Positions 734 through 38,600 of a DNA stretch of 64,000 bases are shown piece by piece. How positions within the stretch are numbered: position 1 is the first letter of the stretch; every line of letters begins with the position of its first letter. The translations under genes were made by a program, and so were the position numbers. The stretch is taken from NCBI GenBank assembly GCA_002269645.1, contig NIVC01000380.1:124001-188000 (forward strand). Reading direction: 5' to 3'. Below the pieces are notes generated by a model. It did no database searches. It was not told the origin of the DNA and saw nothing but the letters and a program-made list of their open reading frames with translations. This DNA comes from Macrostomum lignano. Taxonomy: Eukaryota.

Positions 734-784
734 AGCGGAACTCCGATGCCAAGTGGACAGGAAGTCTCTATCAAACAACGAACG

Positions 785-6700: not shown

Positions 6701-7646
6701 CGGGGATTTGGGAAATCATGGGGATTTGGGAAATTATGGGGATTTGGGAAATCATGGGGATTTGGGAAATCATGGGGATTTGGGAAATCATGGGGATTTA
6801 GGAAAATTATGGGGATTTTGGAAATTATGGGTGATTTGGGAAATAAAAACGCCTGGAGATGTGACGAATAGCTCGTAATGGACAGCTTTAGCTCAAAGAA
6901 TGGGGATTTCGGGAATCAGTAATTAGGATTGTTATAAAGCTGACCTGCCCGCGCAAATCAGTCAGCTTAGCATCGCTGGCTTTCAATCGTTCTTTCAATT
7001 CTTTCCGTTCCTTTTTAGTAGATTCTTCTGGCGCCTCCCCGGCAGCGCTAGGCGCCATCTTAGGGGGCGCCGAGGCCGGAACGGCAGCCGAAGCAGCGCT
7101 GGACCGCTCCAACTCGTGACATTTCCTACTCAATTGAGCTGATTTAGTTCGCTCTTTCTCCAATTCAGCCGTTAATTCGCGAATCTTTTTTGATAGTTCA
7201 ACAATTTTAGTTGAGGCCGCGGCCGCGGCGGCGCCAGACTCGGCATTCGAGCCGCCTTCGCCTCCGGCGCCCATTGTTAGCCGATCTTTAGCCCTTTGCA
7301 AGCGTTGAATTTCAAATTCTCGCTCATTAACTAGCTTCAATAGGCGACCATTTTCGTCTGTTAAAGCGCGCACACGATCGCGCAGTTCCAGCGTCTCTGT
7401 AGAATCATTATTGCTGTTATTGTTGCTTTTGCTATTTCCGCTACTAGCAATAGACAGGCCTAGATTATCTTCAACGCCACCAAAAGCTGTTGATTGCCTG
7501 GACTGCAGCTGAGTCTGGGAAGAAGACTGTTGCTGTTGCTGTTGCTTGATTTCTTTCATTCGTTCCAGTCTGCGCTGTTGCTGCTGCTGTAGCCTATTGA
7601 ACTCGCTGCTAAGCTCGGCTGGCTTCTGCTGCCCATTGTTTGACAT
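785..7646 (-). CDS. CCDC13: Coiled-coil domain-containing protein 13. CDS join (minus): 7646-6945, 6058-5648, 3965-3573, 3043-2847, 1178-785; about 698 aa
   Basis: Recognised family motifs: [71 protein letters not shown]. All four introns are GT-AG with compatible phases (0,0,0,2). The total of 2097 nt is in frame to TGA at 785-787. Confidence 0.92.
1200..2846. repeat. CCDC13 intron 4 satellite: 24-bp unit CTGTCTAATCTCA+GCCTGTGCTCA with interspersed 13-bp half units
   Basis: Direct reading. The array fills almost the whole intron and runs up to the donor at 2846. Confidence 0.97.
3123..3500. repeat. CCDC13 intron 3 degenerate ~23-bp repeat (GTGGATTAGGGGCGATTCTTAAG)
   Basis: Direct reading. 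Confidence 0.9.
4020..5640. repeat. CCDC13 intron 2 compound satellite of ~31- and ~38-bp units (ATCCCATCACTAATCCGCCATGA...)
   Basis: Direct reading. Confidence 0.95.
6130..6845. repeat. CCDC13 intron 1 satellite: 21-bp GGGAAATCATGCAGAGGATTT and 18-bp variants
   Basis: Direct reading. It explains the 7-aa periodic ORFs in this region. Confidence 0.95.
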
Positions 7647-9353
7647 TCCTTGGCTGGCTATTGAAGTTTACTGTACTGAATACTATTAATTATTTTTATA
7701 TGCTGTTTCTTTTTTAATTACATGAAATATACAATGCAAGTTATTATTACTAAGATTGTTTCATTATAGTGATTTGAACTGTTTAACAATAAGCTCCATG
7801 TATGTGTGTCATTGCCAGTTGTAGTTGATATATAGTCCCATATCTAGTTTCCTATATTGGCCACTTCAGTTATTGGAAGTTCTAGGAAACTAGCTATAAT
7901 TAAAGGAAACTAACCTAAATAATTAGCTATAAATATTTTAACACTAGAAAAAGTAAATTTCAAGCTACAAGGAATATAAAAATATATCTAAGCCTAATTT
8001 GTATATATCAACAATTTAATCTAACATTGGCACTACAACTTATATGCCTAGTTTTTGTACTACATATATATCATTTTGAACTTGGATATTAATTAGCACT
8101 TCATTTTTTAGACTAGATACAATTCAAATTTAAATGAAAAATAAATCTTTGTTTAAAAGATTTTAAATTTTAGAGTTTTAGTTTAAAAAATCTCTAGAGT
8201 GTTATGGATATTCATTCAAACATACAAACCTTAGAGATTTAGTATATTTGGATAGAAGATTTTCTTATAATCTTTAAAAGCAACTACATTTATCTCAACA
8301 TAAGCCACTACTACTCTAACTACATAATTTGTATATAATATAGAAAATCACTGTTACTTGATTTTCTAACCAAGTTAGAAAAAGAGACTTAAAAGTTCCT
8401 ATTTTAAAAGCTTGGAAACTGGCAAGTAGCAACATTCATTTATTTCTAGTGCTCTATCTATTTTATCTTTATCTATTAAATGAAAGGCTCGAATGGTATT
8501 TTAAATATTAGTTGTAACCTTGCTATTTACTTAAGGGTTCCTTTAAAATAGAATATCAAAATAATAAAAACAATTAAAAAATGGATAAAAATGCTTAAAA
8601 TTTGAACAAGTTGGATATATAGAAAACAGTATAATAAGTTTATAAATAGACTAACAGACTAACAGAAGTTTTTAGCTAAGTTTAATATATCTAAATATAG
8701 TATACTAATAGTAATACAAATTGTTGCTAAAGAATACTGATTTTATTTTCTTTATTTTTCTCTTTTATTTTATAATTTTTTTTACTAAGAACCATACATT
8801 TAATTAAAAAGCTATAGTTTTTTATAATAAAATACTAATAATACAAATATATTATAACCATTTTTGGTTTATATAGGGGCCTAGTTTCTATGGTTAGAAA
8901 ATGGAAATCTAGTATATAAAGAGCCATAAAAAAGAGCACATAGATGGCATCTAGGTGGTATATAGATTATCCTCCAAAATATATATTTTAATATATGCAA
9001 TGTCACCTTCTTAACTTATTAACTATGGTCTATATTTTTCAAACAAGAATGTCTTTAATCAATTATAATCAAATGCATATAAGAAATATAATTAATGGGA
9101 TACTATAAAAATTATATATAGTTTATTCTTATTTCTAGACCATGGAATATAATTTAACTATTAAAAATCGATAGACTTTAAAAAGTCCATCAACTTGCAA
9201 ATATGTATACAAAGGTAGGCTTAAATTTAAATGAAGAGGTTTTTTGCAAATAAATAACTTTGAAATGCAAAATTACATTGTATAAAAAGCATTTGAAGGC
9301 CTAAAAGGTAGAAAAAATATCATTTCAAAGTAAAAAAACTATTTATAATATAG

Positions 9354-9760
9354 TAGAATTCAGACGGGATCCTGATCCTGATCCTTAAATCCTATGATCC
9401 TAAGGAAAATTGTATTCTCGCAGGACTAGGATCCCAACCCTAAAAAACACAAGAATTGGGAACAGGTCTTTTGATCAAAAGTTTATAGAATTAGTGATTA
9501 TTTAAATGTATTTTGTTCTAACTTATTCATTATATTATTAATTTGTTTTGTTACAAAACTTTGCACTAATTTTGTTATATTTTACTTTTGATCTTGACAT
9601 TTTTTGCTTGATTTTATTTAACTTTATATGGACCTACAAACTACAATACACTAAAAGACCTGATCCCAATTCCAGAATCCTGATTCCAATCCTGATCCTG
9701 AGAAAAAAATTATTCCCGATCTCAATCCTGCCCAAAGATTTTAATCCCGTCTGACTTCTA
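9354..9760. mobile_element. hAT-type MITE, 407 bp
   Basis: 17-bp TIRs TAGAATTCAGACGGGAT / ATCCCGTCTGACTTCTA (16/17 match). 8-bp TSD TAATATAG at 9346-9353 and 9761-9768. An 8-bp TSD is typical of hAT. No ORF. Confidence 0.85.
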
Positions 9761-10150
9761 TAATATAGCTATATAATTAGGCTTTTATATAGATTAAAAC
9801 AGTTTAAATTATTATTTTTTAGAAGACTTAATAAAAAACTAATAGTCATATCATTATAATTTAAAAAATAAGCTTTTTTTATAGGTGTTCCATATTTGTA
9901 GGAAATATAAAGTAGCCAGGTTAGATATAAGATAAAATAGCATATTCAGTGAGGTGAGCCTAACATCATATTGCTATAAACTATTTGTTCTTGACACTAT
10001 TTGTTACAGTTTTCAATTGTTCAAATTCTGGGAACTTTTGGCTCAACTTAATAAAACAGACAAATGGAAATCTAGCAATTCCAATAGTTTTGTACATAAA
10101 TTTTTTTGTCAATAATAATAATTTTAAGTAACTTTAGGCTTAGTTAAATA

Positions 10151-10457
10151 GGGGGCCATAGCCCAGTGGTAGCGCAGCTTCTCTAGTGTGCCAATGACCT
10201 AGGCTCAATTCCAAGTGTAGTCACATTAATTTGGGGCTGAATTATAATCTTGGCTTGGCTTTGCTCATGGAATTAATGGCCTTGAGAGCCAACCCCCCAA
10301 GGTACACTCCTGTGTGTGTGCCTGCATACGAATCCATGCACTTGTATGCCTGCTCAGAGGAGTTGGTGGAATGGGTAATAATGCCTCTTGCCAGTTATGT
10401 GCCTGTCGCTTAAAGTAAGCCAGGGTACAAACAATGCCTTGCCTCTAATAAAAAAAG
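10151..10457 (+). mobile_element. tRNA-derived SINE, decayed copy with a ~46-bp internal deletion
   Basis: Aligns along its length to the copy at 33254-33616. A-box TAGCCCAGTGG, mutated B-box GGCTCAATTCC, A-rich tail. Confidence 0.85.
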
Positions 10458-12374
10458 AAAATTTTAAGCTTTGTAAATGACAGAATAGGTAAAAAGACAA
10501 CAAATTTAATGTATTATCAAGTGCCTACTTTTGTTTAAATGTGTATAGTATAGGCTAAACAATGTTTTTTCTGGCTTAAACTTCATGGCTGGCCAATCTG
10601 CTGCCTTAGCAATAATCCTACTCCTACCTTTAAGTATATATATGGCTAAGCTATATCTTATTACAAAACTCTGAAAAACTTGATATCAACTTGTATAATA
10701 TACTTGTACATAGAATAATTATAAACAAGATGGCTTCTATGATATAGGCCTATAAAATAGTTTGCCAGGTACCACCTATTGGCAAATAGCCATTAATATC
10801 TATTATTATTAATATAATTTATAGGCATTTAAACTAAAGTAGGCACTCTATAATATATTAAATTTGTTCTCTATTAGGCCCCTATCTATTTTTATTTTTG
10901 TCACTTACTAAGCTTAAAGTTAGGCCCTAGGCCTAATAGGCCCTACTATGCAAATTTTTCTTTGTTATATCAATTTTTTTTGGCCTACATTTTTTGTAAT
11001 TTCTTAATTTTAAACCAAAACCCAACCTTTAGGAGGCTAAACAAAATGTAGAAAGTAGCAGTCTTTTGGTGAGATGATAACTATTAACTCAAATGTCCAT
11101 TTTACAAAAGGCAAAATATCTAGGCCCCTAGCTCCCCCAAGTGTGGCGGTCTTGGTGTGTGGCGGTCTTGGTCCTACACCAGTTGTGAGTTGCCTTTACA
11201 AAGTATATATTAAATAGGTTAGGCCTATATAGAGTCCTACAGTCCTAGACTAGGCCTATTTAGGCCAATAAACTTATAGGCCTACTATAGTTTTTATTAG
11301 GGCCTAGGCCCTAAAAAGCTAGCCTAAAAAGATAAAATTTTAGGCTAGACAAGGCTGTATGCAAACTATAGTCTATGGCCAAATTACAGTTAGGCTATGC
11401 CATATGCCATGGCCATAGCCCATATATAGGCTGTATATTATATTGGAAGCATCTACAAGGTTCTTATATTGGAAGGTTCTACAATTGATTCTGGTGTAGA
11501 ACTACCTGGGTCAGGCAATATGAAAAGGCCCATAGTCGAACTGATGCATTTTTACGTGCATCTACACTTACAGCATTATGTTATACTTAACTTTTCGATA
11601 ATCATTTTTATCGATTTTAACTATAATATGTTATATACAATACAAATACTACGACACAAGTTATTGAGATTCGTGCTCTTGTAAGCATTTTTAATGTTGA
11701 TGCTTTCTAAGAACACTGTTAAAAAAGAGTGAGGACGGACGGGGGGTTGGAAACAGAAAATTTTCCGGTGTAGGTTTCCGTTTCGGCCGTTTAAATCGGT
11801 GCTGATCTGTTGCGATTAAACAAACTCGAACTAACTCGGGGTGCAAAATAAAGGAGCTCCGGCTGCTGCATGAGTTCTTCAGGCTCCAGGCGGAGGGTAG
11901 CTGTGGTCGTGGCTGAGCGGTATAGCTATGCCTTCCGTCTCTAAGAATGCCGAATGCAGAAATGTACCCGCTATACGGAGAACTAAAATAAAACTAATAT
12001 TTGGTGAGTGCAGTACTAGAGTAGTAGCTCCACTACTAGTAGTAAAGAGTACTAGAGATCGCTGCCACCAGCGCGGTAATTCGCGGAAAAAGCTCTAAGA
12101 CTCAAATAGCGCGAATTTGCCTAGAACTTCTCTTTTAGTAGTTAAGACCACCGAGGATATGAATGCTTCCGAGAGGTTGCGAAGGCTAAGACACCGACTT
12201 AACAAACGAATAACCGCTGAATAAAATACAATTGTAGCTGCGGCGCTAACGGAATATTATTATTTATGGGTAAATTAAAGTCGGCAAATAATAATTATTA
12301 CCGTGAGCAAAGTTAACTAATTAGTTTGCTGATCGGGACAGGAGTTGGATCGGGTCAAGGGGCAGTCAGGCTTA

Positions 12375-14356
12375 TGATGAGGACGCACTTTTTCCCAAAT
12401 CCCGCGCTAGCACATGGGCTCTAAACTTACTAGCCTACTAACAGTGGGCGATGGGCATTTTTATCCTTTTTCTGCGAATTGTCATAGAATCTATACTAGA
12501 TATAATGTCTGGCCATACTAGTAGTCATAATTACATAGGCATTGCTTTTTGGGTCATAAATCATCGCTTTCGAAGCTGGTCTGACAGCCACCTGCGCCTC
12601 ACTCAGTGTTGAGACGGGCGCCAGATGGTCTGAGAGGATGCGGGCGGTAGCTTTTTTCTCATCATTTTGACAGGCCATCAAGATTTATGAGGTCAGAGCC
12701 TATTGTTCGGATTCACTCAAGCCTGTGACAGCTTTGACAGCTATGCGTTTTACCCCTAAAAGTACTTTGGGATTAGCGATTAGCAATTTCTCTTCATTAT
12801 CTTCACTTTCTATTTAATAAGAGCTTTCTAATGCATATTTTTTCATTAATTTCTGTCAATCCTACGCGAAAAGTCATAAATCATTTTGTTGCGATTTTGA
12901 GTGATTTATGGCCGCACCTGTCATCTTTTTACGACCCTGTGGGAACTGATAGGATCTCTCGGTCACGTGATTCTGGGTAGCAACAAGCTTAGCCAATCAG
13001 AAAATTCGGCGCTCATTTTAACAAAACGGCTCAGCCAATCAGAATCGACGTGTTCCATTATAACAAACTGCGGTCCAGTTGGCGGCTATTTAAACCGGAG
13101 TTTTTGGCCCGCTCGGACGCAACTTTTGCTCGGGCCCAGCACGCAACTTCTGGTTCCCGGAGCACGACCGTCGTTTCTTGATCCCCGGATTGCGACTTCC
13201 CCCATCATCATCAAGGACGAGCCCCCCTGTCGACAGCAGCGAACATCAAGCGAAGATCATCACCTGCTAGCTATCAGCGAAGATCGTGACAGCATCATCC
13301 CGAGTCTACAGCTACAGAGCATCAAGCCGATTCGGTCACTGTGGATTACCTGGTCTCCGGCTGTTGAGTTTCTGATTGGTTGGGTGAGAGGCTACCTAGA
13401 CTTGCTTGATTGGGTGATTCCCTATCTGTCCCCTGTTTCAGTAGCTGGATTAGGCGCACACTTTTGCTCATTTTGTTCAGTAATGCTGTTACTGAGGCAG
13501 AAATCATTCAATAATACTGCTAGTAGTCTGAAACTCCAATTCAATCTGAGGTGTGAAGTGATCTAAGGAGAAGGTTAAATCTAACAGTTATTTTTATCAG
13601 TTTTATTTCTTTGTTCGCCGATGGCTCAGATGAGTAGCTAAGCTAGTGAGGGCCGGTCACAGTGGACCAATGGCAAGGCAGAGTCGATCAATCAATCAAA
13701 TCAGTGAGCAAAACTGCCAGAAGTGCAGAATCGGCGCCAGAGATGTACTTTGTGCACTCTAGGTTAGCCAAGCGGCTCGGGTAATGAATCATGCGGTCTC
13801 TGAAGTTCGAGTTAGTCTATCATCAGCGCTATGAGAGGCTAGTTGGCGCGTTGAAGGCCAAAAGTACATAACTTCGTATTTAGCAATGTAATAGTACATG
13901 TAACTACCCCATAGTCTCACCACTGCAAGGATCCCCTGCACAAGTCCCCTCTGTACCTGCATGGCCAATGCGATCTAGTCCCAGCAGTGTCCCTTATCAT
14001 CGGCTATGACTTCGAGATTGACAGCAAAAAGACACTAGTTGGCAGGTAAGTGCAAAGCCCCTTCTAGTCGGAAGCCCGATTTCGAGAGTCCCGGTGTGGT
14101 GAGCCTGGACGCACGGGCTGGTGGCAGCGAGTTAGCTTAGTCTGCGGATTAGCTAATTTCTACCTTCAAAATTCTCCCTGCTTGTCTCTCGCTGTCCCTC
14201 TCTTAGCTATAGGACCTAGACTGCTCGCCACACGATCAAGCTACCACGGGGCTGACCATCTGACAGGAGTGGGGGGCCAGGTCTCTAAGTGATTTGTTTC
14301 TGAGCCTGAGGCCCGAAGGCTTCCCTAACAAGGGGCCCGAAGGTCGAAACCCATCA
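12375..14356 (+). repeat. 5' LTR (1982 bp)
   Basis: TG...CA ends. Nearly identical to 20377-22362: I found about 4 substitutions and 2 small indels. Confidence 0.96.
12964..13094 (+). promoter_or_regulatory. Candidate LTR U3 promoter: CACGTG, two AGCCAATCAG (CCAAT) boxes at 12991 and 13033, TATTTAAA at 13087 (repeated in the 3' LTR)
   Basis: Motifs are in the conventional order and spacing. Function is inferred. Confidence 0.55.
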
Positions 14357-14358
14357 AA

Positions 14359-14376
14359 TGGTGGCAGCGGTGGGAT
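14359..14376 (+). promoter_or_regulatory. Primer-binding site TGGTGGCAGCGGTGGGAT, complementary to the 3' end of tRNA-Leu
   Basis: Lies 2 nt after the 5' LTR. It matches the reverse complement of ...ATCCCACCGCTGCCA-CCA of eukaryotic tRNA-Leu(AAG/TAG type). Confidence 0.9.
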
Positions 14377-16705
14377 ATATGGTAAACACTAGCCGGTAGG
14401 AAGTGGTAAAGTGCTCACCGGTAGTGATGGCTGGTAAATGGCAAATTGTCACAAATAATCATATCGAGTTGCGCCGTTTAGATTTCAAAATTGGGAATTT
14501 AGGTTTCTATTAGATTACTGTAAGTAGTCAGTTGCGATAGCTTTTCAAGTCTGAATTATGAGAGTCCAAAAATGCACAAAAAATTTATGCTACTGGAACC
14601 AAAAAAATTACTAGTATGAATTGCTTACCATTAAATGCATGCCTCTTCCAAAAAATCAACCAAAAAAATTATAAAAATTCAAAAAGCCAGAGCATATAAA
14701 AAAATCAACCCCGCACATATAACTCTCTCAGCTTGATCAGTTATCTAAGCTCTCTGCTTAGTTCTTCAGTTTTGATTTCAGCCAGCTAATTATGTGGAAA
14801 ATAGAGACTTAGGATAGTTCTTGTACTTTTGCTAAACAGAAAAGTTTCGAACTGATCACTCGAAATTAAGCTATTAATTTTTGTCGTGTAGACAAGAGGC
14901 CATTATCCGAATGGTAATGCTTCCTCGGCCAAAACGTTCATTATAGAATGCTGACAGCGCTCGTAGTTTTTGTCTTGTTTGCAAAATTTAGAATCAGGCA
15001 GCTTTTTGGATGTGCGAAGCCTTGGTTTCATACGCAGGGCCTCACGGGTTTTGGGTTCAAAGGTTATACTCTGGAGCAGATTAGTACGGGACAGTCGGAT
15101 TAGCGTACTGTGTGATTATAGTATCATTTCGATTGAAATCGGGGTGTTCTATCTGAGTGCTTCTCACGAATTGTTGTCCGCTATTCGGGCTTTGGTGGTA
15201 TAAATCGCTTTACGTAAGTGGCAACGGAGAGCTCAAATTCCCACCGCAATTCTCGGTCTTCCGGCTAACAATGGCAAGTGCTGTGCCGTTGGGCCTCTGG
15301 ATGCGCTGGGTCAGACATCCATGTCCTGAAAAATATGTCTGGGGTCGACGGCTACCGGAACGCGGGAACAGCCACGCTACTTTGGGTTTGGGTACAGAAT
15401 TGTGAGGTCTGGAGTTATTTTAAGTTCGTACATTTACCATCTGCTTAGCCTAGGAGTCTGGAAAGTGTGTAGGTATTACTTTCAGTAGTATAGTTTGCCA
15501 GTGCACAAGTAATTTTTCCTGGTTGCGGAATTTAGGGTTTGGAAGTTTGCTTTTGCCCTTTCGGTTCTTTCTTAGAATTGGAGGGGTATCTAATGTAAAT
15601 ACAGTAAGGAAAGCGGAGAGAATTACCCACACGGTGCCATGGTAGTATGTGCGAATTCCAGCTACCGCTCTGGTTAACGATTCTGCAGAGAGCAGAAAAC
15701 GCCGTGGCTATTCATTTTTATGATAGCAAGAGGAGGGGAGCGCAGCTTTGTCTGGACAGACTCTACTGACTCAAGACACAGATGTCTTCTGTGGTTCGCC
15801 GCTATAAAAATACCCGACCCGATAACGTAGGGTCATAATATTTGACAAACTTTCCTGCTGCCCGTAGCTTTTTCTATGATCAAAATTCTTAGGGACCGTG
15901 CCAAAAGGTTTTGTTGCGGAGTGAACACTACACTACGGACCTGCTTAACTCCTTGTGTATTATCTGTCTGTTCGCGAGTATCGTTTATTAGGTGTAATCC
16001 GCCCTCACCGGTCAATGCTGACGAAAGCTACACAGAGGGGCCACTGGGCGCGCTGGGTCAGACGTCCAAGTTCCGCTAAAAGATCAGCCTTGATGGGGAT
16101 TGTGAATCTGTCTAGCCGTAGCAGCACCCGGACGGTTTCCTAGTGGCGATACCACGCAGGAGAGCTCTGATACACATGAGGTGCCCACATATTGGCGCCT
16201 GCAATTTAGGTTAATGAGGACTGAAGAGACCCTCCATGATTTACTAGCCCATTAAAATTGTTCGGAAGCAAAAAGAGCCGCTCAGAGAGAAAGAGAGACT
16301 GAGACTGTAGTAGCCTGCGGAAAGCTGTGGCCTCAGCCCAGTTGAGAATCAGTGAGTTTAAAAGCAGCAATTTGAGAAAAATCCGAGATCGGATTCAAGG
16401 CAGAGACAAGAGGAATTTAGGTGTGAAAGATTTTGAGTCAAGTGTGACTGCAGTGTGAGTGAAATCAGTGAAGTTTCCGCCGAGTTGGTTTTTGCGTATA
16501 TTTTAATTTTTGTGCTGTGTTTGCGATCATTATCGCAAGCCCCGCGTTCGTATTGTACACTTTTTGTATATAGATCGCGTATCTTTTGCTTATTTGCGTG
16601 TTTTTTATTTTTGCTTGTAATTTATTGCTTTTGTTTTGAGCTCCCCAACTCGCGGCGCTCAACCCCCCATTGCTCATTTGTGGCAACTGGTGTTGTGCCC
16701 GAACT

Positions 16706-17878
16706 ATGGAAACATGTAATTCCAGTACCAGTAAGTCAGGAGGTAGAGGCAGAAGAGGTAGAGGGAATAGGAACGGATCAGCAGCTGCCGCTGCAGCCGC
16801 CTGCGATTTTTCGTCCCAGGGCTCAGTCTCCCCAAATGTATCAGAGTGCGGGTCATCCCCGCAGAGAGCCCCACCTCAACCCCAAGCCGCCGACATGGCA
16901 GCCCAATTAGCGCAAGCCCTTGCAGCCATCGGATTGGGCAGAGAGACACAGAGTGTCAAGATTGGCGTTGAGAAATTCAACCCAGCAGAATCCTGCTTCC
17001 CCCAGTGGGTTGACAGAGTCAAATACAAACTCAGATCTGAAGAGATTAGGGACAGAGAGCAGAAGAAGAGCACAGTAATCTCGCTCCTCCCCCCAGATCT
17101 GCAGAGTCTTGCTATTGCCCTCCATCCCGGCCTTGACTTTGAGGAATTCATAGAAAGGTTAGGTCGCCAGGTAGGAGAGGCCAGCTCAGAACTAGCGAAG
17201 AGGAACAAAGTCCGGAATCTAAAACAGAAGGCAGGCCAGAATCACCACGCCTATTCGGCCATGGTGCGTAGTGTGATAGCTTCTGCTTACCCCGACATGA
17301 GTCCTAGACAGTTGGAGTCGGAGGTGATCTTTGCCTACTTGGAAACAGCTGACATCGCCCCAGATGTGCGCAAGTCGCTGCTAGGGCAACAGTTTCGCAG
17401 CATTGATGAAGTGCTGGCAGCACAGCAGAATCTCCAAGAGGCAGATGAGATTTCCCGGCGCTTAGCGCGTGACCAGCCCAGATATGATCAGCGTAGGGAC
17501 GATAGAAACAGAGATCAGAATCGCCCCAGCGACAGAGAATATCAACGCAGGTGGGTCCGCATGCTAGAGTCAGAGGAAGGAAGGGAAGTAGAAGAGGCAC
17601 TGGCAGATTTACAGCAGCGTCAAAACAGCCTAGATGAAACCGTCGGCAAGATTTACGGCGCTATGAGCCAGGTTGCGGAGAGGATTGATCAGGCCATGAT
17701 AAGCCACTCAGATCAGTGGGAGGGAGACCTCACCGTGGTAGAAGATACTGAGCGAGCTAGCCAACCGCCTGAGGGCAAGTCCCCGCCCCCCTCGTCTCAA
17801 AATCTGTCAGCGAAGCCCGCACTATTGAGGCAGAACGCAATTTATGGTGACCCGGCCAAGCAGACTGAAAAAAACTGA
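16706..17878 (+). CDS. gag: Retrotransposon Gag (capsid-like); probably extends to 18056 if one A in the A7 run at 17868-17874 is extra
   Basis: A ~390-aa ORF inside the LTR element with a gypsy-type capsid segment (VEKFNP...W...LKQKAGQNHHAY...SAYP). No CCHC knuckle seen. Confidence 0.8.
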   Translation: METCNSSTSKSGGRGRRGRGNRNGSAAAAAAACDFSSQGSVSPNVSECGSSPQRAPPQPQAADMAAQLAQALAAIGLGRETQSVKIGVEKFNPAESCFPQWVDRVKYKLRSEEIRDREQKKSTVISLLPPDLQSLAIALHPGLDFEEFIERLGRQVGEASSELAKRNKVRNLKQKAGQNHHAYSAMVRSVIASAYPDMSPRQLESEVIFAYLETADIAPDVRKSLLGQQFRSIDEVLAAQQNLQEADEISRRLARDQPRYDQRRDDRNRDQNRPSDREYQRRWVRMLESEEGREVEEALADLQQRQNSLDETVGKIYGAMSQVAERIDQAMISHSDQWEGDLTVVEDTERASQPPEGKSPPPSSQNLSAKPALLRQNAIYGDPAKQTEKN

Positions 17879-18046
17879 GGTTTACCGGCCCCCGCAGTTG
17901 CGCAACAGTGCGCGCGCGCGCCCGCCTCCCCTGCATGTTCCTACCCAGGGTGAGAGCAGTACAGGAGAAGAGAATGTGAGGCCCCCGCCAACCCCGGCGC
18001 CTGGAGCACAGAAACAGCGGCCCACTTTCTATCTCCCGTCCGGGTC

Positions 18047-31730: not shown

Positions 31731-32949
31731 TTAAGCGCTGTTTTCAGCAGCCAAGTAGACCTTAGTGAGGCCTTGTCTGTCAAATATTTCAGCCATCAAT
31801 CGGTCCAGATTGGCGTTGACTCCGCGCAGACCGCTGCAGACTTGCGCAGACCAGAGAAAATAGGCGTCCACCCGGTCGCGAGTCCAACCAACCGGGTGTA
31901 CGCGTTCCAAATCGCGCAGATTGTAAATCTTGTCGGCCGATTTCACAAGCTTAGCGCGTACGGACGCGTGCGGTGTGTGCAGGATCTGTGTTTGAGGTTT
32001 GACGTGGCGCTTTGACTCTCTGATTTAAAAATAGCTTCTTTTCATAAGATCGCAACTTTAAATCAACTTATGGATTGCTCAATTTAATCAGCTCAAAAAT
32101 TTTGCTCCAATTTCATGGATCTTACATTATGGAATCATATTGATTTCTTGGATTAGTTTTATCGATTTTTCAGATTGGCTTATCGATTTTTCAGACTGGT
32201 TAATCGATTTCTTAGTTTGACTTACCGATTCTTAGATTGGCTTATCGATTTATTATATTGGCTTATCGATTTCTTGGATTAATTTTAACAATTTCTTTGA
32301 TTAACTTATCGATTTATTAGATTAGTTTTATCGATTTCTTGATGATTAGTTTTATCGATTTCTTAGATTAGTTTTACCGATTTCTTAGATTAGTTTTTAT
32401 CGATTTCTTAGATTGGCTCATCGATTTCTTAGATTACTTTTATCAATTTCTTTGATTAACTTATCGATTTCTTTGATTACTTTTATCAATTTTTAGATTA
32501 GTTTTGTCGATTTATAAATTAGCCCTTGAATTGCAAACAATAAAACTGCTTGTACTTTATTTTTTTACCTGGATTCTTTTCCGTTCTGCAGCTGGCAGAA
32601 GTTTATCGTCGCTGCACTCTTGCACAACCTGAGCAACTGGCCGACCAAAAACTGTTTCGAGCTCTTCAAAACTTGTATCGGTGTCTTCAACAGTGTCGTG
32701 AAGAATTGCTGCCTCAAGAGCGATTGTGTCCGACACACCAGCTTCGGAGCTGAGAATTCGAGCCACTCCAATTGGATGGTTGATGTAGGGCGTCGCTTCT
32801 GGATCTTTGCGTCGCTGACACTTGTGCTTCTCGGCGGCAAAGTTGACAGCTTCTAGTAGCCTGGGCAGACTGCCCACTTCTACATCATCGATGCCCTGAT
32901 TTGCACTTAATACTGGAGCTGAGCGATCCATTCTGTGTTTAGCAGTCAT
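31731..32949 (-). CDS. HDDC3: MESH1 (ppGpp hydrolase / HD-domain phosphatase). Join (minus): 32931 (or 32949)-32569, 31985-31731; about 205 aa
   Basis: Motifs HKCQRRKD, TPYINHPIGVA, AAILHDTVEDT, VQECSDDK, KLVKSADKIYNLRDL, GWTRDRVDAYF.W. The intron is phase 0, GTAA...CAG. Confidence 0.95.
32150..32520. repeat. HDDC3 intron degenerate ~20-bp repeat (TTATCGATTTCTTAGATTAG)
   Basis: Direct reading. Confidence 0.85.
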
Positions 32950-33253
32950 GCAGTATTTTAATAAGCAGCTTGTGTCAATCAAGGTTTTTATGGGTTATTT
33001 TTTACTACTACTACCTAATTGCTTATTGAATAGACACTATTGCAGTCGTGTCCTGCAGGTTGGCTACTGGTTATTATGTTTAGTGGATTTTAACTGGTTT
33101 GAATTCTGGTAGAATGCTGCCATCAGGTTCCTGGTATTCCCTAATCCTAGTACTTAGATAATTAAAGAATAAAAACAGGAAACCAAAGATTTATTAGTTA
33201 CTTGAAGATATAAAACTGATAGTAGTGTAAAATCATATCTACTTTACTATTAA

Positions 33254-33616
33254 GGGGGGGGGCCGTAGCCCAGTGGTAGCGCAGCTGCTCTGGTATGCCA
33301 GTGACCCAGGCTCGATTCCAAGTGCAGTCACATTAATTTGGGGCTGAATTGGAATCTCGGCTTGGCTCTGCTCGTGCAATTAACGGCCTTGAGAGCCAAC
33401 CCCCCAAGGCGCAGTGAAGTGTACATGCCTAACGATAAATAAAGTTAGGGCCGCTGTACACTCCTGTGTGAGTGTGTGCCTGCGTACGTATCCGCGCGCT
33501 TGTGTGCTTGCTCAGGGGAGTCGGCGGAATGGGCAGTAATGCCTCTCACCGGTTGTGTGCCTATGTCGCTTAAATTGCACCAGGGTGCACACAACCCCCC
33601 TGCCTCTAATAAAAAA
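33254..33616 (+). mobile_element. tRNA-derived SINE, near-intact copy
   Basis: G-run start, A-box TAGCCCAGTGG, B-box-like GGCTCGATTCC, tail CTAATAAAAAA. 13-bp TSD ATCTACTTTACTA at 33237-33249 and 33617-33629. Confidence 0.88.
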
Positions 33617-35125
33617 ATCTACTTTACTACACTATCATTATATACATTTATGCACCAAGACACATTTTGGCATATATTTTAGAGAAATTTTTGTTTTTGG
33701 CATACACTGGCATACATTTAGCTGAGATAGGATTCTTGTTCTAGCATACACTGCTACATGATCTAGAACCTGGGGGTTTTTGGCAATACCTATAGCTATA
33801 GGCTGCAATCAATATTGGCAATGTCCTAGTTTCCCATGTTAAATTGTTTTGACCCGATTTTCATTATTTTTAGTGTAAATCATGGCTAGACAACCTCGAG
33901 TGCCTGCTCAAATATCTTACCTCTTGCCAATTTATGGCCATCAGCTAACCTCTGTGACCTTGATATCAGTCATTAAGAATACCAATGAAGGAAAAGTTTT
34001 ATAGTCAGCATGGCGCCAGTGATGACCTTTTTGACTCCCACCTTAGCAAGTTTCTCTGGTGCTGACTCTACCAAAAAAGAGTTCTGACAACTTTTTGTAC
34101 TGGCTGACACATTACTACATTGTGTAATACTCCTTTTAGTTTAGACATAAGACTCATTTTAAATCTTGAATAGGCTAAACTTGCTTTTGTTTGTTTGTTT
34201 CAAATTCTAGGTCAAAATAATTTAATGCAGGAAACTAGGACATTGCCTCAATATCTTTTTTAGGCTTTATCTTTGCCATTGCAATTATAAGCTAATAGTC
34301 AATACCAAGCTAAAGGAGCTATCCCTTATATGATAATCTAAATGGCAAATTTGTTTTATAGATCCACTGCTTGCAAGCTCTCATTTTTGTATTTTCAATG
34401 GATATGTTATGTTGTCATATTTGCTATAGTAGGCAGTAGGCTACTTGGACTTTTTGAACATTAGGTTCATAAAATACTTCCAATTTTCCTATTTTTCTAA
34501 AACTTTTGCCAGAGTCTTAGAGGCTGTCCAAAATGATAATAAAGCAAAGAAAACTGCAAAAAAATACTGTCAGAGTTAACAGGAGCTCAATTTGTTAATA
34601 TTCTATGCAATTAATGATTATTTGATGCAAGCAGTTTTAGAGAATTGTATGTTTGAAAACTAAACTTTTTTAGAATCATGGCTCTCAAAGGTAAATATTT
34701 TCTAAAATTTTGATGAATTCATTGTAAAAAACATTTAGGAGGTAAGATTTTTAACTTCCAATAAAAAGAGTGTCTATTCTAATTTTTTTTTCACTCAGTT
34801 TGTTATAGTGCACTGAGAGTTCTACATCAAATTAGTGTTTTTTAAAAATGCTGACTCACGGTTTGCCATCGCCTTGGCTTCCTACTTTTGATTCACTATT
34901 ATTCTCTCATGGTTGTGACTAGCTGTATATTCTTTATTTGTTTACCTATACTTAATTTCTACTAATCTACATCAATTGTCTTCTCTATTTTGAAAGGTAA
35001 TTATAGCTGTTGATATCAATTAGTTTGATAAGGTTATAATTTTTCTCTATGGAGGTATTTGATGACTTGCTGAATGTTTTATTTAAGCTTCATTACATTT
35101 CTACTCTAGAACCCTTAGTCTCCAA

Positions 35126-35600
35126 ATTTATCTACCTAATCTACAATAGACACCCATGCCTCTATTGAAGTTTCCCCATGTAAAATCAATCCCCATGAAG
35201 ATTCTCCCCACCCTAAAACCCCCCATTCTCCATGTCCCAGTGGTTGGTAGTTATCAGCCTATCTCCCTTTGTCAGATCCCCCTTGGGTTTAGAATTTATC
35301 TACCTAATCTTCAATAGATCCCCATGCCTCTATTGAAGTTTAAATAAATAAAATCAATCCTTATGAAGATTCTCACCACCCTAAAACCCCCCATTTCCTA
35401 TGTCCTAGTGGTTGGTAGTTATTGGCCCATCTCCCCTTGTCAGACCCCCCCTCATTAGACCACCCTTAGGTTTAGAGTTTACCTAGGCCTACCTAATCTT
35501 CAATAGATCCCATGCCTCTATTGAAGTTAAAGTAGATAAAATCAATCCCCATAAAGATTTTCCCTACCCAGAACCCCCTATTTACCATGTCCCAGTGGTT
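35126..35600. repeat. ~168-bp diverged tandem repeat, 3 copies, CpG-free
   Basis: Recurring TTTATCTACCTAATCT...CCCATGCCTCTATTGAAGTT...GTGGTTGG. Confidence 0.85.
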
Positions 35601-38600
35601 GGCTTTAAGCTACAAAAAACAAGCTCAAATTTGAAATCAGCACCATAAAAAACCCCTAGAGAGACAAAACTATGATCCTATCAAAACTGCAACTAGGCCT
35701 ATTTTATCTACCTAAAGTTCAAGAAGTCTATCTACTTTTAACAGAGGATAGCCAATCCTCTGTTAAGGGATTGGTCCAATAGATGGCTTAGGGGCTATCT
35801 TGCAAAATCATTTACTAAATTCACTACCACTAGGCCTATATGCACATTTTTTAGCTATTGCCTATTAATATGAAACTTGCCAAAAATGAATACTTTCATT
35901 ATGCTAACATTTTAGAAGTGTTTTGGCATTTAGATTCTATTTGTAGGGGGTTGTAAGTTAACTTTTATTGCAATTTCTAGATTTTCTAATTTTTTCAAAA
36001 TTTAACAACTATTAGGCCTAACAATTATAATTATGCAATTTTGAATTTGTGCGTTGATATGACTGGCAAAAAATGTATCTATGGCCAAAATTAGTTACAA
36101 ACTCTGGGGCTTTAAGAAGAGGGGCACTGCTAAGCTGCAAATATTGCGTCAGCATCATTGCGAATAGTGCTTTCCAATTAAAATTGCCTTAAATTGGCTG
36201 GCGGACGACCTTCTGCCTCAACATAGATTTTGCCACCTTAAGAGTTTCGCCCAGCCCTTGAACTAATAAATATAAACACTTTCTAAATACTTCCAAAATG
36301 TTGGCATAAACATTCATTTTTGGAAAGTTTTATGTCAATAGCTAAAAAATGTGCATACACAGTGAATTTAACAAACGATTCTGCAGGATAGCCAGCTTAG
36401 GCCTATATCTAAAGCGTTGGCTGCAATTAATAAATCAGACTTAAAAAGACTTATGATCAAATTTATCCATGTTAAATATCTGTCACCAAACTTGTTTCTT
36501 GCCAAATTTGTGCATGTCCTTATTCCTATTTCCTACCAAAACTTTAATTAGGCTAGAGCCTGCCTACAAAGAAACTAGAAAAATACTTTTGAAAAGAGAC
36601 CAAACCAGCAATAGCAACACATCATCCACTTGTAGGTTATAGCTAAAGTAGTAACTTTGTTTCTGATCAAAATAGACAGTGATTCGCGTGTCCGTTCGTT
36701 ATTTGAGAATAGATGAAGTAGTAGTAGTAGTAGTAAGTTGGCTCAGGCAAGAAGCCTGTTTGGCCAGTATATTTCTGTGTATTTAAGTTATTTTGGCATT
36801 AGTTGTTTAATTACGATTAAGTTCAAAAGGTTAAATTTGTTTGTTCAAAAGGTTAAATTTTTACACGAGTTATGATGCGAGTTACGATTTTTGTAAAATT
36901 ATTAAGGTATTTGAAAGAGCGTTTTTTGTAAAAAGATGTAGTATTTTGCAAGCGCGCAATATTTCAAAGCGTGAAAAACGAACGAAAAATGAACAAAAAC
37001 GAACTTCGAAAGAACTTTACGTTAAACGAATAACGACGATTTAAATATGAACACTTCTTCGAAAGCACATTTGAAATAAAAAATAAACAGGATGAAAAAT
37101 TGATAAAACAAAACTCGATTGAAAAGAAATCTAATTTCTATTTTCTACTATTGTACTAAATAGTTAATAAGATTTTACAGAATTATTCTGTCACCGAATT
37201 TAAAAGGTTGTCGCTGAATTGGCTTCACTGAATTTGTCGTTGGTGAATCTGTCGCCAAATTTGTCTGTCCCCGAATCGATCAGCACCCCTGTGACATTGG
37301 CCTATACCGGCTATACGCAGATAAATTCTGGATAGAACGCATTGTAAAATTAGAAAAAGCCTAGCAAAGCCTAGAAAAGGTCCTTAACGCCTTTGCTTCA
37401 ATTCTGTATTGTACATTTTAAATGATGTGCACTGCACAAGCTTGTTCTCGATCGTTGGAGTAGTAGAGTTTTTTGGTGGAATAAAAGATTTCGAGCTTGT
37501 TTATTGTGTCTTTATTTCTAGTATTCATGGGTACTTCACGTAAGTACATGTAATACATCATGTGATATAGCTTCTACTAAGCTATTATCACGATATGTTG
37601 CTCGCGCGTATTTGCGCGTCTCAATCGATCGTCTGAATCTTGCGCGCTACCACCCGCGAATTTCTACTCGTGGCGCATATGGTGACCACATTCATTTGGG
37701 CTAGCTTGTGTGTGCAGGAAAATTGGCCGCAAAGGGTAATTGTTAATGCAGTTTGACCACGTACTGCATGTAGTACATGCCATGCCTCCAAAAGTTCAGT
37801 GTATTGCATGACGCGCCTCGTCAGCTCAGGAGACAAATCAACGAAATATGCAAACTGTCTCGATGGGACGATGTCGCTAAAACGGATCGACATCGACTAT
37901 GCTGCATGTCTAGTCATGGATCGATTCTGTAAAGGGTTACTACGATAGGAATGGGTTTTTGCTTTATAAAATTCAGTTCTGCATGCTGAACATAACATCA
38001 TGTATCGTTTCTACGATCGTATGCAGCTGAAATTGCAATTAAACTGCCACTTGACCTTACATTTTCACGAAGCCATTTTTATAAGCGTCAATTTACCTAC
38101 TGTATAGTAGAGCATAAAACTACTTGAACGCGTTGTGGTTTTGTGGTAATTTTTACCTACATGTACGTGCAATAAATCGGTAGCTACGAGCTATATAATT
38201 ATTTGTCTATTTTCACCTTCGCTAGAAAACAAGTTTGACTTTATAGTAGTTACAGTATACGCTCGCTTCATGAACCCCACACTTATCATTGCACTACTAA
38301 AGCACCAAGCACATGTTTACAGATTATACAAATGATTACACTGCGTGCACAAATATAATGCTGCTTTCGAGAGGTTGTAGGGGTTGAGATGCGAACAAAG
38401 ACTAAGCCTACAGTATATTTATACAGTTCAAGATCGTGTTCATACTCGCGTTATGGGATTTTTAACATCTGTTGTGTGTACCAGTCAGTTCTAAATAAGG
38501 TTTCTCCCTATAAATAAAAAAATGTCAAAAATTGCGCTGACCTCGAATGACCTTTTCTACTCGACTATCTGTGCAAGCCTATTTTGAATGGATCTGACGA

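What the first reader, a model, noticed from the sequence alone, without database searches (positions are those of the whole stretch)
7700..11500. Domain with CG plus CWG (CAG/CTG) C>T hypermutation: possible plant-like symmetric non-CG cytosine methylation in an animal
Seen: aligning the SINE copy inside this domain (10151-10457) to its sister at 33254-33616, nearly all differences are C>T/G>A in the domain copy. By hand I count about 12-13 at CG, about 8 at CWG (4 CAG-strand and 4 CTG-strand, e.g. CTGG>CTAG, CCAGG>CTAGG, GCAGT>GTAGT, CTG>TTG, and GGCAGT>GGTAAT hit on both strands) and only about 5 at the more numerous other C/G sites. The flanking DNA agrees: in 7801-8400 I count 0 CG, about 3 CAG+CTG and about 44 TAG+CTA, roughly double the base-composition expectation. 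Equally AT-rich DNA elsewhere (about 36850-37050) is CG-rich. Known: 5mC deaminates to T; animal methylation is mainly CG, while symmetric CHG/CWG methylation is a plant CMT3 trait (Dcm targets CCWGG, but these sites are not limited to CCWGG). Inference: a locus-restricted germline CG+CWG methylation or RIP-like mutator acted here. The domain ends near a perfect minus-strand donor GTAAGT at 11571, so it may be a 5'UTR intron or outron of CCDC13. The CCDC13 exons keep many CGs.
Basis: partly seen in the sequence, partly recalled or inferred. Interest (0 to 1): 0.8.

Follow-up and report, generated by a model that had tools for sequence, protein, structure and literature searches.

The report
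Cytosine-decay islands in a flatworm genome
Two AT-rich non-coding stretches just upstream of genes in the flatworm Macrostomum lignano have lost nearly all CG and many CA/CTG cytosines by C-to-T change, which fits long-term germline DNA methylation by ordinary animal DNMT enzymes better than a plant-like system.

Summary
The window is Macrostomum lignano, a flatworm reported to keep DNMT1 and DNMT3. The SINE at 10151-10457 differs from its relatives almost only by C>T/G>A changes, and 7647-11530 is nearly CG-free (o/e 0.13).

Three corrections:
1. The locus is not unique. A second island lies at 32990-36050 (CG o/e 0.08). The "sister" SINE is a young insertion inside it, with a perfect 13-bp target duplication.
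2. A third, equally diverged copy from a CG-normal locus lost 0 of 18 CG sites. The decay is therefore regional, not just a matter of age.
3. The non-CG part is not CWG-specific. Pooled rates are CG 15/34, CAG 5/19, CTG 6/18, CAH 15/58, CTH 0/33 and CCN 2/59. This order (CG > CA > CT with a following G > CC) matches the published flank preference of animal DNMT3. No plant chromomethylase is needed.

The magnitude is unusual for an animal: non-CG sites decay at roughly 30-45% of the CG rate. Methylation itself is inferred, not shown. A palindrome, TAGGCCTA, clusters in both islands and is unexplained.

The parts
7647..11530 (.). Island 1: AT-rich (GC 29%), non-coding, CG-depleted stretch between the first coding exon of a minus-strand coiled-coil gene and a CG-rich flank
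   Evidence: It has 11 CG in 3884 bp (o/e 0.13). Only 2 of them (8490, 9169) lie in old unique DNA; the rest sit in the foldback element, the SINE or a 16-bp duplication. There are no ORFs above 71 aa and no Rfam family. Dinucleotide o/e: CG 0.07, CA/TG 0.91, TA 1.12, CC/GG 1.55.
10151..10457 (+). Old tRNA-derived SINE copy that decayed in place
   Evidence: Twelve of 15 CG dinucleotides are lost. There are 28 C>T/G>A changes against 4 in the reverse direction. The changes are derived relative to two other copies.
9348..9766 (.). Foldback/MITE-like element inside island 1 that still holds 4 of the island's CGs (probably a later insertion)
   Evidence: Terminal inverted arms 9348-9370 / 9744-9766 are 87% complementary. 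CGs lie at 9365, 9419, 9717 and 9748.
10745..11313 (.). Cluster of 11 TAGG+CC+TA palindromic motifs at the right-hand end of island 1 (5' with respect to the gene)
   Evidence: The exact motif TAGGCCTA occurs 11 times in the window against 1.12 expected.
11566..11571 (-). GTAAGT donor-like site about 35 bp beyond the end of the CG-free stretch
   Evidence: Splicing was not tested.
6888..7646 (-). It keeps its CGs.
   Evidence: CG o/e is 1.09. No Pfam family and no database hits were found.
11531..12368 (.). CG-rich unique flank of island 1 (possible promoter or first exon)
   Evidence: CG o/e is 1.26. It has no similarity to other parts of the window.
32990..36050 (.). Island 2: a second CG-depleted AT-rich stretch, directly upstream of the minus-strand HD-domain (MESH1/HDDC3-like) exon
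   Evidence: It has 6 CG in 2682 bp once the young SINE is excluded (o/e 0.08, GC 34%). TAG+CTA is 139 against 88.8 expected. A further CG-free piece at 36416-36684 may belong to it.
33258..33617 (+).
   Evidence: It has a perfect 13-bp target-site duplication ATCTACTTTACTA at 33237-33249 and 33617-33629. It keeps 18 CG and has only 1 lineage-specific change.
35112..35603 (+). 168-bp tandem repeat (about 2.7 copies) inside island 2, used to polarise in-island substitutions
   Evidence: C>T rates are CA 6/42, CT 1/36 and CC 1/66.
35793..35923 (+). Island arm of a diverged inverted repeat. Its partner lies at 36285-36393 (minus) in the CG-intermediate margin.
   Evidence: It was found only by purine/pyrimidine-coded BLAST and aligned. 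It has 10 C>T changes in the island arm, all at CG, CA or CTG.
35484..36405 (.). Cluster of 5 TAGGCCTA motifs at the right-hand end of island 2
32557..32982 (-). HD-domain exon (MESH1/HDDC3-like) abutting island 2
   Evidence: Pfam HD_4, E=3e-14. CG o/e is 0.79.
36685..37300 (.). AT-rich but CG-rich flank beyond island 2
   Evidence: GC is 32% and CG o/e is 1.8.

Best explanation
These are two discrete non-coding islands of the Macrostomum lignano genome, probably long first introns or upstream regions of two minus-strand genes. I infer that they were densely cytosine-methylated in the germline for a long time.

Proposed mechanism:
- Deamination of 5-methylcytosine, or deamination at sites engaged by the methyltransferase, turned C into T at nearly every CG.
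- At roughly 30-45% of that per-site rate, it also hit cytosines followed by A (any CAN) and cytosines in CTG.
- Cytosines in CC and in CT not followed by G were spared.
- This order is the flank preference of animal DNMT3-type de novo methyltransferases, so the non-CG part is read as DNMT3 spill-over inside heavily methylated DNA.
- The decay drove the islands to 27-34% GC, removed the TG/CA products of CG decay by a second step to TA, enriched TAG/CTA and left C/G mainly as CC/GG.
- Later insertions (a young SINE, a foldback element) have not yet decayed.

Shown: the regional, directional, 3'-context-specific C>T spectrum and the resulting composition.
Inferred: that methylation is the cause, that DNMT3 is the enzyme, and that the germline is the tissue.
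For: - Organism: a RasGAP ORF in the window is 100% identical to an M. lignano protein.
- Published background: M. lignano is reported to keep DNMT1 and DNMT3 and to have low global 5mC.
- Sharp islands: CG o/e is 0.13 and 0.08, against 1.09-1.26 in the abutting exon and flank.
- Polarised SINE comparison: the island copy has 14 GC>AT transitions (8 CG, 4 CWG, 2 CAH), 0 AT>GC and 0 at CTH/CCN. The control copy in a CG-normal locus has 15 changes, 0/18 at CG, and 5 GC>AT vs 6 AT>GC.
- Pooled pairs: CG 15/34, CAG 5/19, CTG 6/18, CAH 15/58, CTH 0/33, CCN 2/59. CA and CWG each differ from CTH+CCN at p about 1e-5. CTG vs CTH gives p=0.001.
- Tandem repeat inside island 2: CA 6/42, CT 1/36, CC 1/66.
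- No 5'-neighbour preference and no strand bias.
- K-mers: C-versus-T odds relative to background are 0.06-0.10 for CGN, 0.26 for CAG, 0.41 for CTG, 0.43-0.65 for CAH, 0.67-1.0 for CTH and about 1-1.4 for CCN.
- Forward simulation from the window's own CG-normal DNA. A CG-only model fails, giving GC 0.39, CA/TG 1.39 and TAG/CTA 0.92. A CG+CA+CTG model gives GC 0.28, CA/TG 0.87, TA 1.15, CC/GG 1.34 and TAG/CTA 1.75, close to island 1 at 0.27, 0.91, 1.12, 1.55 and 1.74.
- Enzyme precedent: DNMT3B in vitro methylates CpA at 17%, CpT at 7% and CpC at 6% of its CpG rate, with a strong TACXG preference for both CpA and CpT (PMC7672481). At mouse prospermatogonial SINE B1 loci, methylation is 94% at CpG, 9.8% at CpA, 1.3% at CpT and 0.4% at CpC (PMC3553940).
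Against: - No methylation data were available. The Wasik 2015 bisulfite paper is not held.
- Counts are small: three inside/outside pairs plus one tandem repeat. Two pairs are unpolarised.
- A few 'CAH' events are CA/TG doublets that probably descend from CpG.
- The inferred non-CG rate (about 0.3-0.45 of CG per site) is far higher than the roughly 0.03-0.1 ratio of methylation levels in mammalian cells.
- Both strands of CWG are hit, whereas mouse CHG sites are hemimethylated.
- The DNMT3B preference for T at -2 and A at -1 is not visible.
- The adjacent exons show no CG depletion at all, unlike classical invertebrate gene-body methylation.
- An in-island foldback pair shows no CA preference (CAH 1/7, CTH 4/11; unpolarised).
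- For island 2, the k-mer fit is slightly better with CG+CWG than with CG+CA+CTG.
Confidence: 0.55

Rival explanations
1. Plant-like symmetric CG + CWG (CHG) methylation by a chromomethylase-like or horizontally acquired C5-methyltransferase, with a maintenance loop.
For: - Both strands of CWG are hit about equally (CAG 5/19, CTG 6/18), and CTG far exceeds other CT contexts (0/33).
- CCG is 0/8 in the SINE.
- In the cleanest polarised subset, CWG at 4/16 exceeds CAH at 2/21.
- The k-mers of island 2 fit CG+CWG best.
- The non-CG/CG rate ratio of about 0.3-0.45 resembles plant heterochromatin (own knowledge) more than mammalian cells.
Against: - CAH is hit as often as CAG (15/58 vs 5/19, p=1.0), and CAT is hit 4/21 in the tandem repeat.
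- DNMT3B itself prefers a G after both CpA and CpT, so CTG > CTH does not require a CHG enzyme.
- Only DNMT1 and DNMT3 are reported for this species.
- No methyltransferase inventory could be made here.
Confidence: 0.1
2. Methylation-independent, chromatin- or structure-dependent cytosine deamination. AT-rich, heterochromatic or late-replicating DNA breathes more, and cytosines at weakly stacked CA/TG steps deaminate faster. CG loss would come from methylation or from the same cause.
For: - The effect is confined to very AT-rich DNA.
- Spared cytosines are those stacked in CC/GG and GGCC.
- No methylation data exist for the locus.
Against: - The CG rate is about 25-50 times the baseline. Twelve of 15 CG are lost while CTH/CCN change about 3%. 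That is typical of 5mC.
- CT contexts without a following G are flanked by A/T as often as CA contexts, yet are unchanged (0/33).
- The SINE was GC-rich (55% in the young copy) when it entered the island.
Confidence: 0.15
3. Age only. The same context-dependent decay acts genome-wide, and the islands are simply the oldest neutral DNA. Everything else in the window would be young repeats or selected exons.
For: - The window is mostly satellites, a 99.4%-identical-LTR retrotransposon and exons.
- The undecayed SINE inside island 2 and the CG-bearing foldback inside island 1 show that age matters.
Against: - The L002 SINE copy carries as many lineage-specific changes (15) as the island copy (17) but lost 0/18 CG sites and shows no GC>AT bias.
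- Ancient coding exons next to the islands have CG o/e 0.8-1.1.
- Unique non-coding stretches elsewhere have CG o/e 0.76-1.3.
Confidence: 0.1
4. A RIP-like premeiotic repeat-targeted mutator, or editing by an AID/APOBEC-type deaminase.
For: - C>T changes have a CpA component and produce AT-rich, TpA-rich blocks with sharp borders.
- Island 1 has TpA/ApT of 1.20.
Against: - Repeats elsewhere (the L002 SINE, the young SINE, the LTRs) are untouched, while unique DNA in the island is CG-free.
- CG, not CA, is the main target.
- Island 2 fails the RIP indices, with a substrate index of 1.33.
- Specificity is on the 3' side with no 5' neighbour preference, the opposite of APOBEC (TC/CC) or AID (WRC).
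- The -1 bases include G and A, so the pattern is not UV-type dipyrimidine damage.
Confidence: 0.05
5. Chance or compositional artefact. The islands would be natively AT-rich sequence, and the non-CG pattern would be noise from a handful of alignments.
For: - Few events were scored (43 forward C>T in the three pairs).
- CWG is not depleted against the islands' own base composition.
- The Markov-1-corrected CAG/CTG deficit alone is weak (0.79, z=-1.5).
Against: - The direction bias is 28:4 in the SINE.
- Four independent comparisons agree on CA/CTG far above CC/CTH.
- The TAG/CTA excess survives removal of all recognisable repeats.
- The simulation reproduces five composition measures at once.
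Confidence: 0.05

Closest known systems
Germline-methylated, CpG-depleted compartments of mosaic invertebrate genomes (bimodal CpG o/e; own knowledge)
   Same: Sharp regional CpG depletion through 5mC deamination, in a genome whose bulk has CpG o/e near 1. The organism retains DNMT1 and DNMT3.
   Different: - The depleted compartment here is AT-rich non-coding DNA, while the abutting exons are untouched. Classical cases affect gene bodies including exons.
- Depletion is extreme (o/e 0.03-0.13).
- There is no TG/CA excess, because those products decay further.
DNMT3-dependent non-CpG methylation in mammalian germ and stem cells (mouse prospermatogonia at SINE B1 loci, PMC3553940; DNMT3B flank preference, PMC7672481)
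   Same: - The order is CpG >> CpA > CpT > CpC.
- A following G is favoured (CAG, and TACXG for both CpA and CpT).
- It occurs within densely CG-methylated DNA, including SINEs, in germ cells.
   Different: - In mouse, the CpA level is about 10% of CpG and CHG sites are hemimethylated.
- I know of no evolutionary footprint described there.
- Here the inferred CA/CWG decay is about 30-45% of the CG rate, both CWG strands are hit, and CAH equals CAG.
- Enzyme and methylation are not demonstrated in the flatworm.
Plant CMT3/CMT2 chromomethylase pathways (CHG, especially CWG, and CWA methylation of heterochromatin; own knowledge)
   Same: - CG plus CWG on both strands.
- CC contexts are spared.
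- The non-CG/CG ratio is high.
- The effect is confined to heterochromatin-like repeat-bearing DNA.
   Different: - CAC and CAT are hit as much as CAG.
- CTA and CTT are not hit.
- No chromomethylase is known in animals, and none was tested here.
Fungal RIP and RIP-generated AT-rich blocks
   Same: Directional C>T decay with a CpA component makes sharply bounded AT-rich, TpA-rich, gene-free blocks.
   Different: - The decay here is not triggered by duplication.
- CG is the prime target.
- The RIP indices are only borderline in island 1 and fail in island 2.
- The organism is an animal without RID.

Membership tests
Germline-methylated CpG-depleted domain (animal DNMT1/DNMT3 system) | Regional CpG o/e far below that of flanking DNA | tested here: met
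   CG o/e is 0.13 and 0.08, against 1.09-1.26 in the flanks.
Germline-methylated CpG-depleted domain (animal DNMT1/DNMT3 system) | Resident repeats lose CG by C>T/G>A while copies elsewhere keep it | tested here: met
   The island SINE changed at 8/18 CG sites and the control copy at 0/18, both polarised.
Germline-methylated CpG-depleted domain (animal DNMT1/DNMT3 system) | Excess of TpG/CpA as the decay product | tested here: not met
   CA/TG o/e is 0.91-1.09. The simulation explains this by a second step from CA/TG to TA.
Germline-methylated CpG-depleted domain (animal DNMT1/DNMT3 system) | 5mC actually present at the locus in germ cells | not testable with these tools
   No methylome was accessible, and the Wasik 2015 paper is not held.
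Germline-methylated CpG-depleted domain (animal DNMT1/DNMT3 system) | Organism encodes DNMT1 and DNMT3 | not tested
   Literature statements only (PMC11292947 and PMC9246332).
DNMT3-type non-CpG methylation | Order CpG > CpA > CpT > CpC | tested here: met
   CG 44%, CA 26%, CT 12% (all of it at CTG) and CC 3%. K-mer odds agree.
DNMT3-type non-CpG methylation | Preference for G after CpA/CpT (CAG, CTG) | tested here: inconclusive
   CTG 6/18 vs CTH 0/33 meets it (p=0.001). CAG 5/19 vs CAH 15/58 does not. K-mer odds are 0.26 for CAG against about 0.54 for CAH.
DNMT3-type non-CpG methylation | Upstream T(-2) A(-1) preference of DNMT3B | tested here: inconclusive
   No consistent -1 or -2 base is seen among 14 events. 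The sample is too small.
DNMT3-type non-CpG methylation | Non-CpG level a small fraction (a few % to 10%) of CpG | tested here: not met
   The inferred per-site decay at CWG/CA is about 0.3-0.45 of CG. CG is near saturation, so the ratio is rough.
Plant-type CMT3 CHG methylation | CWG hit symmetrically on both strands | tested here: met
   CAG 5/19 and CTG 6/18. One CWG is hit on both strands (GGCAGT > GGTAAT).
Plant-type CMT3 CHG methylation | CWG clearly above asymmetric CHH contexts | tested here: not met
   CWG 11/37 vs CAH 15/58, p=0.81. CAT is hit 4/21 in the tandem repeat.
Plant-type CMT3 CHG methylation | A chromomethylase gene in the genome | not testable with these tools
   No access to the M. 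lignano proteome remained.
Fungal-type RIP | Mutation is triggered by duplication and hits all copies of a repeat | tested here: not met
   The L002 SINE, the young SINE and the 2-kb LTR pair (99.4% identical) are untouched.
Fungal-type RIP | RIP indices: TpA/ApT > 0.89 and (CpA+TpG)/(ApC+GpT) < 1.03 | tested here: not met
   Island 1 gives 1.20 and 1.07. Island 2 gives 1.02 and 1.33.
AID/APOBEC editing | Specificity set by the 5' neighbour (TC, CC or WRC) | tested here: not met
   All four bases occur at -1. The specificity lies on the 3' side.

The most novel reading that the evidence does not exclude
Macrostomum lignano may run a heterochromatin-type methylation system that is unusual for animals. 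In this reading, discrete non-coding islands are kept methylated in the germline at CG and, at plant-like levels, at CWG and CA. The enzyme would be a DNMT3 or DNMT1 paralogue with relaxed specificity, or an acquired methyltransferase. The islands would be marked or bounded by clusters of the palindrome TAGGCCTA. The system would be strong enough to reshape base composition.
Probability: 0.12. Interest if true: 0.8.

Novelty: new variant of a known kind. Interest (0 to 1): 0.5.

Why it matters
[quoted passage not shown] Most flatworms have lost DNMT1 and DNMT3.
- These footprints suggest that M. lignano does not follow the usual invertebrate gene-body pattern. Instead it would methylate discrete AT-rich non-coding islands heavily while leaving the neighbouring exons alone.
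- They also suggest that non-CG methylation, thought negligible in invertebrates (own knowledge), was strong enough there to leave an evolutionary trace.
- The claim is immediately testable. The coordinates, the contexts (CG, CAN, CTG versus CTH, CCN) and an internal control (the young SINE at 33258-33617) are all defined. Bisulfite and long-read data for this species already exist.
- If the islands prove unmethylated, the result is a strong context-dependent mutational process with no known cause.

Tried and rejected
- Protein searches with two exons of the 'CCDC13' gene, meant to find homeologous loci, gave no hits. The first query was probably swamped by low-complexity words. All three searches are now used.
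- The look-up of encoding contigs: the RasGAP protein P0001, the gag ORF and the first coding ORF are not on record. Only two unrelated M. lignano loci were obtained, L001 and L002. L002 fortunately held a third SINE copy.
- L001 and L002 contain no comparable island. All their CG-free stretches are satellites.
- A metagenome scan for the SINE core found nothing.
- Rfam and ARAGORN found no RNA genes. The island has no meaningful ORFs.
- Ordinary BLAST found only the SINE pair. Purine/pyrimidine-coded BLAST was needed to find the other diverged pairs.
- Pair P3 (34167-34282 vs 33783-33910) is low quality and contains a CATG/TGCA doublet that points to ancestral CGCG. Only its core was used.
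- The in-island foldback 10460-10547 / 10820-10921 is unpolarised and near saturation. It gave no CA preference and was not pooled.
- I asked whether the TAGGCCTA clusters are a by-product of the decay. The simulation explains the TA flanks but not the density, and no block of the window turns into a cluster.
- A literature search for the motif found only primers.
- UV, alkylation, APOBEC/AID and transcription-coupled deamination were considered and rejected on 5'/3' context and on the lack of strand skew.

Full report
**Organism and background.**
- A 567-aa RasGAP ORF at 61343-63046 is 100% identical to a Macrostomum lignano protein, so the window comes from this free-living flatworm.
- Reviews state that, unlike planarians and parasitic flatworms, M. 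lignano keeps DNMT1 and DNMT3 and has low global 5mC (PMC11292947, PMC9246332, PMC10658182).
- The primary bisulfite paper (Wasik 2015) is not in the library.

**The observation.**
- A 1-kb scan shows most of the window at CG o/e 0.5-1.3.
- Two non-satellite stretches are almost CG-free: about 7.6-11.5 kb and about 33-36 kb.
- Island 1 (7647-11530) has 11 CG in 3884 bp (o/e 0.13, GC 29%). Nine of those CGs sit in a foldback element, the SINE or a recent 16-bp duplication.
- The borders are sharp. The abutting coding ORF (6888-7646) has CG o/e 1.09 and the right flank (11531-12368) has 1.26.
So are the CG-rich AT-rich control at 36850-37050 and the minus-strand GTAAGT at 11571.
- Over the whole island, CAG+CTG is at expectation for the island's own base composition (o/e 0.8-1.07). 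It is low only relative to the genome background of 1.2-1.6.
- The robust signal is the TAG/CTA excess. It is 1.5-2.0 times the mononucleotide expectation and 1.33 times the first-order Markov expectation (z=3.7).

**A second island and the status of the 'sister' SINE.**
- Island 2 spans 32990-36050, with 6 CG in 2682 bp (o/e 0.08).
- Like island 1, it lies directly upstream of the first coding exon of a minus-strand gene. That exon is an HD-domain, MESH1/HDDC3-like exon (Pfam HD_4, E=3e-14).
- It has a perfect 13-bp target-site duplication, 18 CGs and one lineage-specific change. It is therefore a recent insertion.

**The proper control.**
- A third copy of the SINE was found in an unrelated M. 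lignano locus with normal CG content (L002:13913-14204).
- In the three-way alignment the island copy has 17 lineage-specific changes. Fourteen are GC>AT transitions (8 CG, 4 CWG, 2 CAH, none at CTH or CCN) and none is AT>GC.
- The L002 copy has 15 lineage-specific changes. None is at its 18 CG sites, and the spectrum is balanced: 5 GC>AT spread over CAT, CTC, CAG, CCT and CCA, against 6 AT>GC.
- The decay is therefore regional and context-specific, not a matter of age alone. L002-specific differences could partly be subfamily differences.

**The context of the non-CG hits.**
- In the SINE pair the rates are CG 12/30, CWG 8/31, CAH 6/36, CTH 0/25 and CCN 2/49.
- Purine/pyrimidine-coded BLAST uncovered further diverged repeat pairs with one member in an island. 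These were aligned with transition-tolerant scoring.
- Pooled rates are CGN 15/34, CAG 5/19, CTG 6/18, CAH 15/58, CTH 0/33 and CCN 2/59.
- CWG does not differ from CAH (p=0.81). Each differs from CTH+CCN at p about 1e-5. CTG differs from other CT contexts at p=0.001.
- A few CAH events are CA/TG doublets that probably descend from CpG. Removing them leaves roughly 10/55, still far above baseline.
- A 168-bp tandem repeat inside island 2, polarised by majority, gives CA 6/42, CT 1/36 and CC 1/66.
- There is no 5'-neighbour preference and no strand bias.
- K-mer odds of C versus T relative to background follow the same order: CGN 0.06-0.10, CAG 0.26, CTG 0.41, CAH 0.43-0.65, CTH 0.67-1.0 and CCN about 1-1.4.
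- The AT-richness of the islands is therefore due to loss of C before G, before A and before TG, not before C. CC/GG are enriched 1.4-1.6-fold.

**Forward simulation.**
- I started from the window's own CG-normal DNA and ran each model until CG o/e reached 0.08.
- CG-only decay leaves GC at 0.39, a TG/CA excess of 1.39 and no TAG/CTA excess.
- CG+CA+CTG decay, at the rates estimated above, gives GC 0.28, CA/TG 0.87, TA 1.15, CC/GG 1.34 and TAG/CTA 1.75. Island 1 shows 0.27, 0.91, 1.12, 1.55 and 1.74.
- By KL divergence of trinucleotides, CG+CA+CTG fits island 1 best. The less decayed island 2 is fitted slightly better by CG+CWG. CG-only is worst or nearly worst for both. This is a rough check, not a fit.

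**Mechanism.**
- Specificity on the 3' side, in the order CG > CA > CT(G) > CC, is what animal de novo methyltransferases show.
- DNMT3B in vitro methylates CpA at 17%, CpT at 7% and CpC at 6% of its CpG rate. It has a strong preference for C-X-G in both CpA and CpT contexts (PMC7672481).
- In mouse prospermatogonia, SINE B1 loci carry 94% CpG, 9.8% CpA, 1.3% CpT and 0.4% CpC methylation, dependent on Dnmt3l (PMC3553940).
- I therefore read the islands as long-term germline-methylated DNA whose non-CG decay reflects DNMT3 spill-over.
- What does not fit the mammalian precedent is the size of the effect. Per-site decay at CWG/CA is about 0.3-0.45 of CG, though CG is near saturation. Both CWG strands are hit, whereas mouse CHG sites are hemimethylated.
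- They also allow a methyltransferase-catalysed deamination variant, or a methylation-independent structural effect.
- RIP, APOBEC/AID, UV and transcription-coupled deamination fail specific tests.

**Anatomy.**
- Both islands run from just upstream of a start-codon exon of a minus-strand gene to a CG-rich flank 3-4 kb away (11531-12368, CG o/e 1.26; 36685-37300, CG o/e 1.8).
- Island 1 ends about 35 bp short of a GTAAGT on the gene's strand.
- A long first intron or outron is plausible but untested.
- The gene name CCDC13 could not be verified.
- The lack of any CG depletion in the abutting exons distinguishes this from classical gene-body methylation.

**An unexplained companion feature.**
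- The palindrome TAGGCCTA, with variants TAGG+CC+TA, occurs 18 times in the window.
- Seventeen of these lie in or at the two islands, clustered at their right-hand ends (10745-11313 and 35484-36405). With respect to the genes, those are the 5' ends.
- The exact 8-mer occurs 11 times against 1.12 expected. It is 49-fold over first-order Markov expectation in the unique island DNA.
- All its C/G lie in the spared contexts. The simulated decay reproduces the TA flanks of surviving GGCC (41% GGCCTA against 45-67% observed). It does not reproduce the GGCC or motif density.
- In the two cases where a homologous copy lacks the motif, the motif is an insertion of GG(GG)CC plus TA at a TA dinucleotide.
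- That looks like an excision footprint of a TA-targeting cut-and-paste transposon. A binding-site cluster is not excluded.

**Verdict.**
The hypermutation is regional, methylation-like and has a non-CG component including both CWG strands.
- The process is not locus-unique, not CWG-specific and does not need a plant-like enzyme.
- Methylation itself is inferred.
- The data are few: one window plus one outside SINE copy. Existing methylome data could settle the claim at once.

Noticed in passing
window 10745-11313 and 35484-36405 (also 8874 and 57281): The palindromic motif TAGGCCTA (variants TAGG+CC+TA) occurs 18 times, 17 of them in or at the two CG-depleted islands. It clusters at their gene-5' ends. 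The exact 8-mer occurs 11 times against 1.12 expected. In two homologous comparisons the motif is an insertion of GG(GG)CC+TA at a TA site, which looks like a transposon excision footprint. The simulated decay explains its TA flanks but not its density.
   Followed up: partly
window 11297-11314: A perfect 18-bp palindrome, TTAGGGCCTAGGCCCTAA, built from two overlapping motif variants. It starts with TTAGGG and ends with CCCTAA.
   Followed up: no
window 12369-22362: A young LTR retrotransposon of about 10 kb with 2-kb LTRs that are 99.4% identical (12369-14356 and 20371-22362). It carries gag-like and aspartyl-protease ORFs and lies 840 bp to the right of island 1.
   Followed up: partly
window 9348-9766: A foldback/MITE-like element with 23-nt terminal inverted arms (CAGACGGGAT...) and nested internal inverted repeats. 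It holds 4 of island 1's 11 CGs, so it probably inserted after most of the decay.
   Followed up: partly
window 10460-10921: A diverged foldback right after the old SINE (arms 10460-10547 and 10820-10921). Its arm differences show no CA preference. They are unpolarised and probably saturated.
   Followed up: partly
window 36685-37300: An AT-rich (32% GC) stretch with CG strongly over-represented (o/e 1.8), including a GAAAAACGAAC tandem at 36973-37004. It may be a promoter-like unmethylated island beyond island 2.
   Followed up: no
window 38746-53978 and 1-3000: Large arrays of different satellites, several extremely rich in CAG/CTG (o/e up to 7) and devoid of CG (for example 45333-47776). 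CG-free stretches in the other M. lignano loci (L001, L002) are all satellites of this kind and not decay islands.
   Followed up: partly
window 26404-28644: Three tandem paralogous ORFs with a WSC domain (Pfam PF01822).
   Followed up: no
Two of its exons found nothing among 5.8 billion proteins, so either the gene is missing from public M. lignano protein sets or the search was swamped by low-complexity words.
   Followed up: partly
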